Positions 32,303 through 37,016 of a stretch of DNA of 64,000 nt are shown piece after piece. The stretch comes from Salpingoeca rosetta (taxonomy: Eukaryota > Protista > Choanoflagellata). Positions within the stretch are counted from its first letter, which is position 1. Each line of letters starts with the position of its first letter. The translations under genes and the position numbers were made by a program. The DNA is taken from the NCBI GenBank assembly GCA_033442325.1, contig JAWQFM010000021.1, forward strand, positions 1,182,329 through 1,246,328. The letters run 5' to 3'. The notes under the pieces are model-generated. The model made no database searches and was not told the origin of the DNA. It saw only the letters and a program-made list of their open reading frames with translations.

Positions 32303-33908
32303 GATACGTACGCATGTGTCGTTGCACGCGCGCGCAAGTGCTCGTGAAACTTCGTGTATGTAGCTCCACGTCTGTGAACATGCTCTTTTGCTGCTTTGTC
32401 GACTCTGCCACTTTCTTTTGTCCCTCAGCACTTCCAACCACGTGCACTCGCCCTCAATCTGATGCGGTTCTCTTTGTTTGTTCGTGTGTCTTCTTTACAG
32501 ACTTTGCGACGTTGTGCGCCACAACTCAGGCGCCCACCACCACCACAACAACGGAAGCCCCAGTGTCCACGGCTGCACCCGCAACGCTGACGGGTGCCAC
32601 ACCGCCCGCAACAACGACAACGGACAACACGGACGCCACCACCTGCGCTGTTCGAGGCTGCAGTGACATCAACCTCAACCAGAACTGCCAATGTGATCCA
32701 AGTTGCTATTCGTTTGGCGACTGCTGCGCTGGTAAGTCAGTGTCTTGCTTTCGGTGTTGGGTGATTCAAGAGGAGGCCGCTTTGCGCTGTCTGATTTTGC
32801 TTGCTGAACAAATTGGCCGGCCATACAAGCTGTGTGTGCGTGCGTGCGTGCGTGTGCGTGCGTGCGTGTGCGTGCGTGTATGCGCAACCTGAAACTAGCT
32901 GGCTCATCAAACCTTTCAACGTGTATGTCATGGCTTGTGGTGTAATTTGTGTGTATGGCTGTACATGTGCGTGTCACAGACTTTGCTGCGGTGTGCGAAT
33001 CGTCCACCACCGCTCCTGCATCCACGATCGCCGCGACGACCACCTCCAGCGGAAGTGGAAGTGGAACCATGACTATGCAGCCCAGCACTACCACTACCAC
33101 CACAACAACCACCACAACCACAACCACGACCACGACCACAACGACTATCATGACCACAACCACGACCACCACCACAACCACAACCACAACCACGACCACG
33201 ACCACAACCACAACCACAACCACAACCACAACCACAACCACAACCACAACCACAACCACAACCACAACCACGACCACAACCACAACCACGACCACAACCA
33301 CCAGCACTACGACCACGACCACGACAACTACCACAACCACCACTACTACGACGACCACCACGACAGCAACAACCGCTACTGCATACAACGATCTCGAAAC
33401 AAGTGTTGTCCGAATTAACTGCGGTGGCGGCTCGTTTGTCGACGAGCTTGGCCAAGTGTGGGCTGCAGACACTGGGTTCTCTGGCACGTCATTTGTGTTC
33501 AGCGTGGACGAAGAGATTACGGGCTTCAGGGCAGCGGGGCTGCAGGAGCTGTACAGGACCCATCGCTACACGAAGAAACCGTTTGACCTCACGTATCAGA
33601 TTGCCGTGCCGGCCGCTGGTGGCTACGAACTTACGCTGTACTTTGCGGAGACATTTTACGACACTGCAGGCACCCGCTTGTTTGACGTTGTGGTGGACGG
33701 CACTGTAGTCGCATCCGCGGTCTCGTCCCCCGATGACGGGCAGGGCAGGTACTCTGCATCTGTTGTCACTACCACATTTGAAGCAGCAGCAGCGAAGACC
33801 CTCGTGATCTCGTTTAACCAGATCAACAAGCAGCCATTCATTTCCGGTATCGAGCTGACAAGCAATCCAGCAGGGACAACAACAACTACCTCCACCACCA
33901 CCACCACC

Positions 33909-33996
<88 letters not shown>

Positions 33997-34094
33997 CGAC
34001 GACGACGACGACGACAAGTACGACGACAACAACAACAAGTACGACGACGACAACAACAAGTACGACGACAACAACAACGACGACGACGACGACG

Positions 34095-34164
<70 letters not shown>

Positions 34165-37016
34165 CGACGACGACAACAAGTACGACGACAAGCTCTGGGT
34201 CTGGCTCAGGCACACTTTCGTTCAGCCCAACCACAACCACAACCACCACTTCGACGACAACCACAACCACAACCACAACCACAACCACCACTTCGACGAC
34301 AACCACAACCACAACCACAACCACGACCACGACCACTACCACCACAACCACAACCACAACCACAACCACAACCACAACCACAACCACAACCACAACCACA
34401 ACCACAACCACGACCACTACCACCACTTCGNNNNNNNNNNNNNNNNNNNNNNNNNNNNNNNNNNNNNNNNNNNNNNNNNNNNNNNNNNNNNNNNNNNNNN
34501 NNNNNNNNNNNNNNNNNNNNNNNNNNNNNNCCACAACCACGACCACTACAACAACCACAACCACGACCACAACCACGACCACTACAACAACCACAACCAC
34601 GACCACTACCACCATAACCACATCCACAACCACAATCACCACAACCACATCCACAACCACAACCACCACTTCGACGACAACGACAACCACAACCACAACC
34701 ACAACCACAACCACAACCACGACAACTACAACAACCACCACCACCACCACCACTACCACCACCTCGACAGCCACCACCACAACCACAACCACGACAACTT
34801 CCACCACCACAACCACGACCACAACAACAAGCACCGCGTCAACAAGCTCTGGCTCTGGCTCAGGCACATTGTCTTTCAGCCCAACAACGACGACAACGAC
34901 CACCACTACCACCACCACAACGACAACAACCACATTCACGACGACAACAACGACAACAACAACAACAACAACAACAAGTACGACGACAACGACAACAACA
35001 AGTACGACGACAACAACAAGTACGACGACGACGACAACAACGACAACAACAACAAGTACGACGACAACGACAACAACAAGTACGATAACAACGACGACAA
35101 CAACAACGACGACAACAACAAGTACGACAACAACAACGACGACGACGACGACGACAACAACAACAACAACGACGATGACGATGACGACGACAACAACAAC
35201 AACGACGACGATGACGATGACGACGACAACCACCACAACCACCACCCCCACCACAACCACAACCACTACCTCCACCACAACCTCCACCACAACATCAACA
35301 ACATCTTCTGGGTCTGGGTCTGGCACCATTACCTTCACGCCCTTCACCACGACCACGACTACGACCACGACGGCCACAACAACCACCACTTCAACAACAA
35401 GCACGTCATCTGGGTCCGGGTCAGGCACGATTACGCTGACACCATTTACGACGACAACCACGACGACGACGACCACCACGACGACGTCACCTAGTTGTTT
35501 GGATGACGCGTTTGAGAACAACGACAGCCTGGAGACGGCGTCGTTGCTCTCTGGCCCCAACGGCACGCTAAGCGCCACCATCTGCTCACTTGACGCCGAC
35601 TTTTACAGCATCTTCCTGTGTGCCAACGGCAACCTATCTGTGCACCTGTACTTTGACCATGGGCAGGGCGACCTTGATTTGCAACTGCGCAACCTGGACG
35701 ACGAGTGGGTGGCGCTGTCGGAGTCGTCCAACGACAACGAGCACTTTATGTACATGGAGCCCAACGGCGTCCCTGCATTCCACTACATCCGCGTGTACGG
35801 GTTTGATGAGGCAGAGGCCAGCTACACGATGCAGTACCACCTCGAGTGCCCCGTTACAACCACAACGACGACAACAACAACAACGACCACGACAACCACA
35901 ACCACGACGACAACGACCACCACCACGGACAGCATGGTTCGCTGCTCCCCGAGCATCCCTGCTCTGCCATTTGGTGCAACGGCAGATTGCAAGGGCGTTG
36001 ATCACGGTGATACCTGTGTGGCGGAGTGTGCGAATGGACTTGTGGAGACGGGCAACCCCGCATACGAATGCCGCGATGGGGAGTGGGTTGGTGGCTGTCG
36101 CTTTACGTGCACGAGCTGGATGCCACATGAGGACAACATCTACTTGTATTCTCGCCGCGTCAACGCGGCCCGGCTCCCGTACAGCAAAGCTGCGCAGGTG
36201 TGCCAAACGCTCGGCGCCACGCTGGCGACCATTGATGACGAGGATGAGAACGCGTTCATCTTTGGCCTGAACCCACGCACGGAATCGCTGCGGTGGATTG
36301 GCCTCCGCCGTGACGATGTGGACAACAGCACCTTCACCTGGGTTGATGAGCAGGAGCGCAGCTTCGTCTCGTGGCAGGAGAACCAGCCCATGGATGCAGC
36401 AAGCAACCGGGATTGCGTGCAGATGGGTCACCCGACAGGCACCGTGGCTGGTGGCTGGTCTGTGAGCCGGTGCAGCATGAAGCGCCACTACGTGTGCAAG
36501 GCACCCGTGCCCGAGGTCGGTGACTGCGATGTTCCACCCGTCACCATCCCCGATGAGACCACGACGACAGCGACCACCACCACCACCACAACGGCTGCAA
36601 CCACGACGCTCGAGCAAGGCACAACTGACTCCAACACCACCGCAAACCCGACAGCCACGACAACCACGACCACGACCACGACGACCACGACAACGCCGCC
36701 GCCGTTCTCGATCGTGCTGCGGGTTGAAGGTGCTGGTGAATGGGAGCAGCGGCATTCGTCGCCGTTTGACGGCCAGCGGTTCGCTGCCGTGTATGATTCG
36801 AGCAGGAGCACGCGGGTGGCGCAGCCGCTCAAGTCGCAGGTGGACTCATACCACACCTTCCTGCAGAGCTGCGCAGAGCTGGTGTACCAACAGGGCGGCG
36901 CTGCCATGTACGTGCGCGACGTACCTGACCGGTACCTCTGCTATTCGCTGACAGAGCCTGGCTTCTCCGTTAACACGGGCGAGACGTCCACCAGCTGGGT
37001 GTTCCTGCGCGACTGA
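31303..37016 (+). CDS. Secreted mucin/proteoglycan-like lectin: SP - PPC-like - SMB x2 - poly-Thr - malectin - poly-Thr with SGSGSG motifs - PPC-like - sushi-like - CTLD - PAN-like
   Basis: Exons 31303-31387 ([26 protein letters not shown] signal peptide), 31669-32217, 32501-32731 and 32980-37016 all join in phase 1. SMB domains are [35 protein letters not shown] and [35 protein letters not shown]. Malectin is [51 protein letters not shown]-like motifs are DQYESND and DAFENND. The CTLD has [50 protein letters not shown]. Confidence 0.9.
34431..34530. other. Assembly gap (100 N placeholder) inside the poly-Thr coding tract
   Basis: N run; the true mucin length is unknown. Confidence 0.99.

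What the first reader, a model, noticed from the sequence alone, without database searches (positions are those of the whole stretch)
33045..35426. Five copies of a conserved SSGSGSG-T-h-[ST]-h-x-P motif punctuating poly-Thr, with divergent codons
The copies are at 33045-33065 (then TMTMQP), 34191-34211 (TLSFSP), 34845-34865 (TLSFSP), 35304-35324 (TITFTP) and 35406-35426 (TITLTP). The DNA differs (tcc agc gga agt gga agt gga / agc tct ggg tct ggc tca ggc / tct tct ggg tct ggg tct ggc / tca tct ggg tcc ggg tca ggc) and even switches between the TCN and AGY serine codon families, while the peptide is invariant. This points to selection on a 13-residue recognition sequence (glycosylation, cleavage or cross-linking signal) rather than microsatellite slippage.
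Basis: partly seen in the sequence, partly recalled or inferred. Interest (0 to 1): 0.75.

Follow-up and report, generated by a model that had tools for sequence, protein, structure and literature searches.

The report
Ser-Gly motif punctuating a choanoflagellate mucin
A secreted lectin-mucin of a choanoflagellate carries five selectively preserved copies of a short Ser-Gly-plus-hydrophobic motif in an otherwise pure threonine stalk, which makes it a reasonable but unproven candidate carrier of chondroitin sulfate in the closest relatives of animals.

Summary
Five copies of SSGSGSG-T-h-[ST]-h-x-P lie at the stated coordinates, all in one reading frame. They are almost the only non-Thr/Ser sequence in a 614-residue uncharged stalk.

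The gene has four exons (about 1,633 codons) and encodes a secreted protein: signal peptide, PPC-like domain, two somatomedin-B domains, malectin, a second PPC-like domain, sushi-like domain, C-type lectin and an unnamed C-terminal domain. The assembly gap lies inside a single (ACC-ACA)n block and is nominally in frame.

Selection on the peptide is supported. Copies 4 and 5 differ at 19 of 28 third codon positions but at only 3 of 56 first and second positions (8 synonymous versus 1 non-synonymous change, p = 6e-5). However, each (SG)3 is itself a near-perfect triple hexamer, so local slippage did contribute.

The full motif occurs nowhere else in the 55-Mb genome. It is therefore not a general 13-residue sequon. 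Two parts of it do recur:
- (SG)3 is present in the only collinear orthologue found.
- SG-T-L-S-h-x-P occurs six or seven times in a second membrane glycoprotein of the same genome.

The neighbouring gene is a B4GALT7 orthologue, the enzyme that adds the first galactose of the glycosaminoglycan (GAG) linker.

My best reading, at about 0.4, is that these are clustered GAG (xylose) acceptor sites. Against this, there is no acidic patch, I did not detect a xylosyltransferase gene here, and there is no biochemical evidence. Other agents of this scan noted similar Ser-Gly-punctuated stalks in other genes of this genome.

The parts
31303..31387 (+). Exon 1: start codon and hydrophobic signal-peptide-like N-terminus
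   Evidence: Read from the sequence. GTGAGT donor at 31388. Judged by eye; no signal-peptide predictor was run.
31669..32217 (+). Exon 2: short poly-Thr tract, PPC-like/CBM-like domain, first somatomedin-B-like domain
   Evidence: Pfam Somatomedin_B E=3.6e-4, below the curated cut-off. CBM64 E=0.013, weak. Splice sites read.
32501..32731 (+). Exon 3: T-rich linker and second somatomedin-B-like domain
   Evidence: Pfam Somatomedin_B E=1.2e-3. Phase-1 splice junctions restore the DF..C end of the domain.
32980..37016 (+). Exon 4 (giant exon), including the TGA stop at 37014-37016: all five motifs, the poly-Thr stalks, and the malectin, PPC-like, sushi-like, C-type lectin and C-terminal domains
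   Evidence: A single open frame from 32946 to 37013. Translations.
33045..33083 (+). Motif copy 1, [13 protein letters not shown]; SG serines use AGY codons. Sits just after the second somatomedin-B domain, at the start of the first stalk
33084..33374 (+). Poly-Thr block A, (ACC ACA)n flavour
   Evidence: Codon map; TRF period 6
33405..33851 (+). Malectin domain
   Evidence: Pfam PF11721, E=5.4e-21, 75.7 bits
33876..34190 (+). Poly-Thr block B, (ACA)n/(ACG)n flavour with AGT interruptions
34191..34229 (+). Motif copy 2, [13 protein letters not shown], at the border between blocks B and C
34230..34844 (+). Poly-Thr block C, (ACC ACA)n flavour, containing the assembly gap at 34431-34530
   Evidence: The same hexamer array lies on both sides of the gap
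34845..34883 (+). Motif copy 3, [13 protein letters not shown], at the border between blocks C and D; 35 of 39 nt identical to copy 2
34884..35303 (+). Poly-Thr block D (ACA/ACG plus AGT flavour), ending in a short ACC-ACA stretch
35304..35345 (+). Motif copy 4, [14 protein letters not shown]
35406..35447 (+). Motif copy 5, [14 protein letters not shown], one 34-codon period after copy 4
   Evidence: TRF finds a 102-nt period with 2.3 copies.
35496..35846 (+). Second PPC-like (pre-peptidase C-terminal-like) domain
   Evidence: Pfam PPC E=0.014, sub-threshold. Strong HMMER matches to multi-PPC proteins.
35937..36113 (+). Sushi/CCP-like domain
   Evidence: Pfam Sushi E=0.0031, sub-threshold. Conserved in P0011.
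36174..36500 (+). C-type lectin domain
   Evidence: Pfam PF00059, E=9.6e-17
36690..37013 (+). C-terminal domain of about 108 residues with no Pfam match, conserved in P0011 and P0018
39249..42370 (-). Neighbouring gene, tail-to-tail: B4GALT7 orthologue (xylosylprotein beta-1,4-galactosyltransferase, second step of the GAG linker). Only the verified exons are covered; its 3' end may extend toward about 38.2 kb
   Evidence: Exon-by-exon searches. Against PDB, B4GALT7 (4irp) scores 1.4e-14 and B4GALT1 0.044. Further exons: 6.2e-6 and 0.016. Pfam GT7N/GT7C.

Best explanation
SHOWN. The region is the giant last exon of a secreted multi-lectin mucin. Its uncharged poly-threonine stalks, built from slippage-prone ACN microsatellites, are punctuated by five copies of S-(SG)3-T-h-[ST]-h-x-P. 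Purifying selection keeps these copies constant at the peptide level.

INFERRED. The (SG)3 core is a cluster of serine O-glycosylation acceptor sites. Most likely these are xylosyltransferase sites that prime chondroitin chains, with up to three acceptor serines per motif and at least 15 per protein. That would make the protein a mucin-proteoglycan hybrid. The short alternating tail capped by Pro would present the last SG in an extended conformation to the enzyme, or keep the site free of the neighbouring Thr O-glycans.

The adjacent B4GALT7 gene would then act on the product of the first step. The adjacency is suggestive only.
For: - All three SG serines have Gly at +1, and none has a charged residue at -1. 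The last one has Thr at +2. Human XT1 requires a small residue at +1, tolerates uncharged residues at -1, favours beta-branched Val/Thr at +2, and is inhibited by basic residues (PMC5992326; PMC13038410). The stalk has no basic residue at all.
- The protein has a signal-peptide-like N-terminus and only extracellular-type domains.
- Purifying selection acts on the motif: 8 synonymous versus 1 non-synonymous change between copies 4 and 5, p = 6e-5. Differences by codon position are 3, 0 and 19 over 28 codons.
- Every copy has exactly three SG units, although the hexamer repeat is prone to slippage.
- (SG)3 is also present in the only collinear orthologue, P0011 (44% identity, E = 7e-140). It is absent from the other 155 proteins fetched.
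- The element SG-T-L-S-h-x-P recurs six or seven times in a second stalked membrane glycoprotein of this genome. That protein also has an acid-flanked (SG)6 run.
- The organism makes chondroitin and chondroitin-6-sulfate, and its core proteins are unidentified (10.1101/139022).
- B4GALT7 lies next door. GT43 and CHGN genes are present in the genome.
Against: - There is no acidic residue anywhere in the 614-residue stalk. Animal GAG sites usually have an acidic patch, and for SULF2 an acidic cluster is essential in cells (PMC13405426).
- My exon-level scans found no xylosyltransferase signature in the genome: Xylo_C and Branch/GT14 both gave no match. This is inconclusive, because the genes are intron-rich and published BLASTP work reports a homologue (10.1101/211789).
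- The conserved hydrophobic tail is not part of any described XT sequon.
- The full motif is private to one gene.
- Gene adjacency in a eukaryote is weak evidence, and it was noticed post hoc.
- There are no biochemical data.
Confidence: 0.4

Rival explanations
1. The motif is a structural hinge or sticker. The Gly-Ser core is a flexible, glycan-poor hinge between stiff O-glycosylated poly-Thr rods. The alternating T-h-T-h-x-P tail is a short amphipathic beta-strand capped by Pro. It could pair with other copies, in the same or another chain, or with a partner protein, and so bundle or cross-link the mucin.
For: The alternation of polar and hydrophobic residues is conserved while their identity varies (M/L/I and M/F/L), and the Pro is invariant. 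The same 12-residue string occurs in bacterial Ig-like repeat proteins, where GSGSG is a turn and T-L-T-V-N-P is a terminal strand. The motifs are the only hydrophobic residues in the stalk, and they sit at block borders.
Against: There are only two hydrophobic residues per copy. The neighbouring Thr residues would probably be glycosylated. The orthologue keeps (SG)3 but only loosely keeps the tail. A hinge does not explain why exactly three SG units are kept.
Confidence: 0.25
2. The motif is a sequon for a different serine-linked modification, not a glycosaminoglycan. Examples are a short O-xylose or O-glucose cap, phosphoglycosylation of Ser-Gly runs as recalled from Dictyostelium (from memory, not checked here), or a lineage-specific glycan.
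For: The absence of an acidic patch and my failure to detect a xylosyltransferase signature fit a non-canonical enzyme. The conserved tail, shared with a second gene, suggests an enzyme that reads more than SG.
Against: No candidate enzyme was identified here. Chondroitin is the only Ser-Gly-linked glycan shown biochemically in this organism. B4GALT7 is adjacent.
Confidence: 0.15
3. The motif is a neutral relic. The five copies are left over from the internal duplication of one ancestral repeat unit, and the SG triplets are slippage products with no function of their own.
For: Copies 4 and 5 lie in a 102-nt tandem duplication. Each (SG)3 is a near-perfect triple hexamer. The full motif is private to this gene.
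Against: Third codon positions are saturated (19 of 28 differ), while first and second positions are almost unchanged (3 of 56). The SG count is fixed at three. (SG)3 is present in an orthologue at 44% identity.
Confidence: 0.08
4. The motif is a proteolytic processing site, for example cleavage next to Gly-Ser or Gly-Thr, that cuts the mucin into lectin-bearing fragments.
For: Glycan-free islands in mucin stalks are typical sites of protease access.
Against: There are no basic or other known protease determinants. Pfam found no SEA, GAIN or other autoproteolytic fold around the motifs. Five identical sites within one stalk would be unusual.
Confidence: 0.05

Closest known systems
Clustered Ser-Gly GAG attachment sites of animal proteoglycans (serglycin, glypican and syndecan SGSG(SG) clusters; named from general knowledge, XT1 rules from PMC5992326)
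   Same: Consecutive SG dipeptides in a secreted protein, with Gly at +1, an uncharged residue at -1 and no basic residues nearby. The organism makes chondroitin and has linker enzymes.
   Different: There is no acidic patch. The site is embedded in pure poly-Thr. It has a conserved hydrophobic tail ending in Pro that no animal sequon has. No evidence of modification exists.
Lecticans (aggrecan/versican family; from general knowledge)
   Same: A long central, heavily glycosylated region bearing SG sites, and a C-terminal pair of C-type lectin and sushi/CCP modules.
   Different: Pfam found no Ig or Link modules. The sushi domain precedes the lectin domain instead of following it. The N-terminal part has PPC-like, somatomedin-B and malectin domains. 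There is no sign of common descent.
Second S. rosetta stalked membrane glycoprotein (L078, G000:C2:2426761-2429777)
   Same: SG followed by T-L-S-h-x-P, repeated six or seven times in an S/T/P-rich stalk, plus a longer (SG)6 run. It is extracellular.
   Different: Each repeat has a single SG. The repeats are nearly identical at the DNA level, so they are young. The (SG)6 run has acidic residues on both sides. The protein is membrane-anchored with a Cys-rich head. The DNA shows no similarity to the motif studied here.
Mucin PTS domains with unique interruptions
   Same: The stalk is 83% Thr plus 9% Ser, built from codon microsatellites and interrupted by short unique sequences.
   Different: The interruptions here are five copies of one conserved motif, not heterogeneous sequence.

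Membership tests
Xylosyltransferase (GAG) acceptor site / proteoglycan core protein | Acceptor Ser followed by Gly or Ala at +1 | tested here: met
   Three SG dipeptides in each of the five copies. Rule taken from PMC5992326.
Xylosyltransferase (GAG) acceptor site / proteoglycan core protein | Acidic patch near the site (typically -2 to -4) | tested here: not met
   The 614 stalk residues contain no D or E. The nearest acidic residue to copy 1 is about 20 residues upstream.
Xylosyltransferase (GAG) acceptor site / proteoglycan core protein | No basic residues around the site | tested here: met
   The stalk contains no K, R or H. Basic residues lower XT1 activity.
Xylosyltransferase (GAG) acceptor site / proteoglycan core protein | The protein enters the secretory pathway | tested here: met
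   Hydrophobic N-terminal signal-like peptide, and only extracellular-type domains. Judged by inspection; no predictor was available.
Xylosyltransferase (GAG) acceptor site / proteoglycan core protein | The organism encodes the priming and linker enzymes | tested here: inconclusive
   B4GALT7, GT43 and CHGN were found. Xylo_C and Branch/GT14 were not detected exon by exon. The literature reports XYLT1, B4GT7, B3GT6 and B3GA3 homologues by BLASTP.
Xylosyltransferase (GAG) acceptor site / proteoglycan core protein | Xylose or a GAG chain is actually attached | not testable with these tools
   Needs glycoproteomics or a chondroitinase gel-shift experiment.
Mucin (PTS) domain | Long Ser/Thr-dominated, repeat-built extracellular tract | tested here: met
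   T 512 and S 53 of 614 residues. Period 3, 6, 27, 36 and 42 arrays.
Lectican family | N-terminal Ig plus Link (Xlink) modules | tested here: not met
   Pfam scans of all exons found none.
Lectican family | C-terminal C-type lectin followed by sushi/CCP | tested here: inconclusive
   Both modules are present, but in the reverse order, and sushi is below the Pfam cut-off.
SEA/GAIN-type autoproteolytic site | Cleavage motif embedded in a folded SEA or GAIN domain | tested here: not met
   No such domain found. The motifs lie in low-complexity stalk.

The most novel reading that the evidence does not exclude
This gene, together with the second gene that shares SG-T-L-S-h-x-P, encodes the long-sought chondroitin-sulfate core proteins of choanoflagellates. 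These would be the substrates whose digestion by the bacterial chondroitinase EroS triggers mating. On this reading they are primed through an acid-independent sequon, (SG)n-T-h-S/T-h-x-P, that differs from the animal rule. The core-protein gene lying beside B4GALT7 would then be a functional pairing.
Probability: 0.2. Interest if true: 0.85.

Novelty: new variant of a known kind. Interest (0 to 1): 0.55.

Why it matters
Chondroitin sulfate exists in Salpingoeca rosetta, and its cleavage by a bacterial enzyme induces mating. No core protein that carries it has been identified in the papers I could reach.

A concrete candidate makes the origin of proteoglycans before animals directly testable. 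The candidate offers defined acceptor serines, evidence of selection on them, an orthologue that keeps the (SG)3, a second gene sharing the tail, and a linker enzyme next door.

If the sites are used, they would also show that xylosyltransferase priming can work without an acidic patch, which bears on the unsolved question of how GAG sites are chosen. If they are not used, the motif is still a clean example of a selected peptide island within a microsatellite-built mucin stalk.

Tried and rejected
- **Orthologue searches.** The word-index search with the C-terminal 505 residues returned only PPC or lectin repeat proteins and one M. brevicollis PPC protein without the motif. The malectin domain alone gave one distant hit. 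P0011 as query returned only itself and P0018. The exhaustive HMMER search was what found the single collinear orthologue.
- **Metagenome scan.** The motif pattern gave 39 hits, none in a poly-Thr context. Most are out-of-frame or non-coding microsatellites, or bacterial Ig-like repeats.
- **SGSGSG alone.** It is common in the genome as a hexanucleotide microsatellite and is no more frequent than the reversed control, so by itself it is uninformative.
- **Xylosyltransferase scans.** Searches of the genome with Xylo_C and Branch found nothing. I treat this as inconclusive, not as absence.
- **Literature.** I could not obtain the final Cell version of the chondroitinase paper or its supplementary gene list. 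Searching the SRA run numbers of the orthologue contigs in the literature found nothing, so the source species of P0011 and P0018 are unknown.
- **Nei-Gojobori counts involving copy 1.** TCN-to-AGY paths are scored as non-synonymous, so these counts are inflated and I did not rely on them.
- **Steps not taken.** No structure prediction was run, because the stalk is low-complexity and the only alignment would have had two rows.
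Full report
**What is there**

The window is a piece of a 55.4-Mb, 68-contig eukaryotic genome. It has GT-AG introns and is rich in (TG)n microsatellites. The genome size and earlier notes of this scan point to the choanoflagellate Salpingoeca rosetta. I take that as an inference, not a test.

All are in one frame. They read SSGSGSGT followed by MTMQP, LSFSP, LSFSP, ITFTP and ITLTP.

**The gap**

The gap at 34431-34530 sits inside a single (ACC-ACA)n hexamer array that continues on both sides. 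The Thr frame is open on both sides. With the nominal gap length the frame is kept.

The four-exon model I read from the splice sites is E1 31303-31387, E2 31669-32217, E3 32501-32731 and E4 32980-37016. It sums to 4,899 nt, or 1,633 codons. The right half has no start codon or signal peptide of its own, so one gene spans the gap. How many Thr codons or extra motif copies the gap hides is unknown. I never joined the exons into one protein; all searches were run exon by exon, by reference.

**The gene**

The protein begins with a hydrophobic, signal-like N-terminus. The domains that follow, in order, are:
- a PPC-like/CBM-like module;
- two somatomedin-B-like domains (Pfam E = 3.6e-4 and 1.2e-3, sub-threshold but with the full Cys pattern once the phase-1 junctions are read);
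- a malectin domain (E = 5.4e-21);
- a second PPC-like domain;
- a sushi-like domain (E = 0.003);
- a C-type lectin domain (E = 9.6e-17);
- a C-terminal domain of about 108 residues with no Pfam match.

There is no transmembrane segment, and the frame ends at TGA 37014-37016.

Between the domains lie stalks totalling 614 residues. They contain 512 Thr, 53 Ser, 16 Gly and a few M, P, I, F, A, L and Q. They contain no D, E, K, R or H. Fifteen of the 16 Gly, all three Leu and five of the six Pro are inside the motifs. The motifs are the only non-Thr/Ser islands of three or more residues, apart from two MTM point variants.

**Chance and uniqueness**

A degenerate DNA pattern for (SG)3-T-h-[ST]-h-x-P finds five matches in the whole genome, all in this gene. 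The reversed control finds none. Dropping one SG, or dropping the Pro, adds only one spurious match each.

SGSGSG alone is common as a hexanucleotide microsatellite and is not enriched over the control. The full motif is therefore real, non-random and private to this gene.

**Selection versus slippage**

Copies 4 and 5 are one 34-codon period apart; TRF reports a 102-nt period. Over 28 aligned codons they differ at 3 first, 0 second and 19 third positions. Within the 13-codon motif there are 8 synonymous and 1 non-synonymous (F/L) differences, Fisher p = 6e-5. Synonymous sites are thus near saturation while the peptide is kept. Copies 2 and 3 are younger or have been homogenised by gene conversion (35 of 39 nt identical).

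The stalk between the motifs consists of blocks with different Thr-codon flavours: ACC-ACA, versus ACA/ACG with AGT interruptions. Motifs 2 and 3 sit exactly at block borders. The motifs therefore behave as fixed anchors between tracts that expand independently.

Each (SG)3 is itself a near-perfect triple hexamer, AGYGGA in copy 1 and TCTGGS in copies 2-5. Local slippage therefore made or maintains each core, and copy 1 may be an independent origin. That all five nevertheless have exactly three units argues for a constraint on number.

**Relatives**

The exhaustive HMMER search with the C-terminal 508 residues found thousands of PPC or lectin repeat proteins but only one collinear orthologue, P0011.

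P0011 comes from a 2,106-nt contig of a public sequencing run. The contig starts inside an (ACA)9 tract, so the upstream stalk was not assembled. It aligns at 44% identity, E = 7e-140, through PPC, linker, sushi, lectin and the C-terminal domain.

Its Thr/Ser linker between PPC and sushi carries F-SGSGSG-MFTHTSAP, encoded with AGY codons. The corresponding linker in the window gene is pure poly-Thr. None of the other 155 proteins fetched has SGSGSG. So (SG)3 followed by a short hydrophobic patch and a Pro is kept in this gene family across deep divergence, but its position in the stalk is free. A more distant relative, P0018, has none.

**A second gene with the tail**

One of the loci fetched for SGSGSG, L078 (G000:C2:2426761-2429777), encodes:
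- a Cys-rich head;
- an acid-flanked (SG)6 run;
- seven 21-residue repeats, each beginning T-S-G-T-L-S-V-L-P;
- a transmembrane helix.

It carries the same SG-T-L-S-h-x-P element as copies 2 and 3 here, with unrelated codons.

A genome-wide pattern for [ST]-S-G-T-h-[ST]-h-x-P gives 21 matches against 19 in the control. Singletons are therefore at chance level. Six of the 21 matches form this one cluster. The tail is thus shared by two extracellular stalk proteins that both carry SG runs.

**Neighbour and pathway**

Tail-to-tail downstream lies a GT7 galactosyltransferase. One of its exons matches human B4GALT7 at 1.4e-14, against 0.044 for B4GALT1. Other exons also hit only B4GALT7 structures. 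B4GALT7 adds the first galactose to Xyl-Ser.

GT43 and CHGN genes are present elsewhere in the genome. I could not detect Xylo_C or GT14/Branch exon by exon. Published BLASTP surveys report all four linker enzymes in this species.

S. rosetta makes chondroitin and chondroitin-6-sulfate but not heparan sulfate. The authors inferred proteoglycans without naming core proteins. A literature search found no later identification.

**Mechanism**

Human XT1 needs a small residue at +1, accepts uncharged residues at -1, favours Val or Thr at +2, dislikes basic residues, and binds the peptide in an extended conformation. Single acidic substitutions matter little in vitro. In cells, however, an acidic cluster can be essential.

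The motif offers three acceptor serines that meet the hard rules, the last of them with Thr at +2, in a stalk without any basic residue. It has no acidic residue either. I therefore rank clustered xylose/GAG priming first, at about 0.4. The steps from "selected motif" to "xylosylated" to "chondroitin-bearing" are all inferred.

The rivals, with my estimates, are:
- a hinge plus beta-strand sticker (0.25);
- another Ser-linked glycan (0.15);
- a neutral relic (0.08), contradicted by the codon data;
- a cleavage site (0.05).

**Verdict**

This is a new variant of a known kind: an SG-cluster, mucin-type candidate proteoglycan without an acidic patch, in a pre-animal lineage. It is one of several such candidates that this scan has noted in the genome.

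Noticed in passing
L078:790-2088 (G000:C2:2426761-2429777, + strand): A stalked membrane glycoprotein. It has a Cys-rich head, N-E-(SG)6-D, then seven near-identical 21-residue repeats starting T-S-G-T-L-S-V-L-P, then a transmembrane helix and a splice donor. Its layout is syndecan-like, and it shares the SG-T-L-S-h-x-P element with the gene studied here.
   Followed up: partly
window 39249-42370, minus strand (possibly extending to about 38.2 kb): A B4GALT7 orthologue lies tail-to-tail with the mucin gene. It has many short exons separated by (TG)n-rich introns, and a type-II membrane start at 42370.
   Followed up: partly
L087 (G000:C3:2331933-2334949, minus strand): An open frame with an acid-flanked Ser-Gly cluster (W-DDDD-STA-SGSGSG-STE). 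This is closer to the canonical animal GAG-site context than the motif studied here.
   Followed up: no
L099, L106, L109, L133 (metagenome contigs): Bacterial repeat proteins carry [11 protein letters not shown]-[ND]-P-N-P at the end of Ig-like repeats. The same 12-residue string arises there as a turn plus a terminal beta-strand.
   Followed up: no
window 36690-37013; P0011 residues 480-580; P0018 residues 640-735: A C-terminal domain of about 108 residues (conserved ...LCYSLT... near its end) with no Pfam match. It is shared by the window gene and two contigs from public sequencing runs.
   Followed up: no
G000:C17:1147910-1147935: A single S-S-G-T-L-T-F-A-P match elsewhere in the genome.
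   Followed up: no
P0011 residues about 330-366 versus window 36380-36400: The orthologue's C-type lectin domain has an acidic insertion of about 35 residues that the window gene lacks.
   Followed up: no
window 13797-14445, 43299-43498, 54671-54770, 56341-56440: Four further assembly gaps in the window, several of them inside (TG)n/(CA)n or other simple repeats.
   Followed up: no
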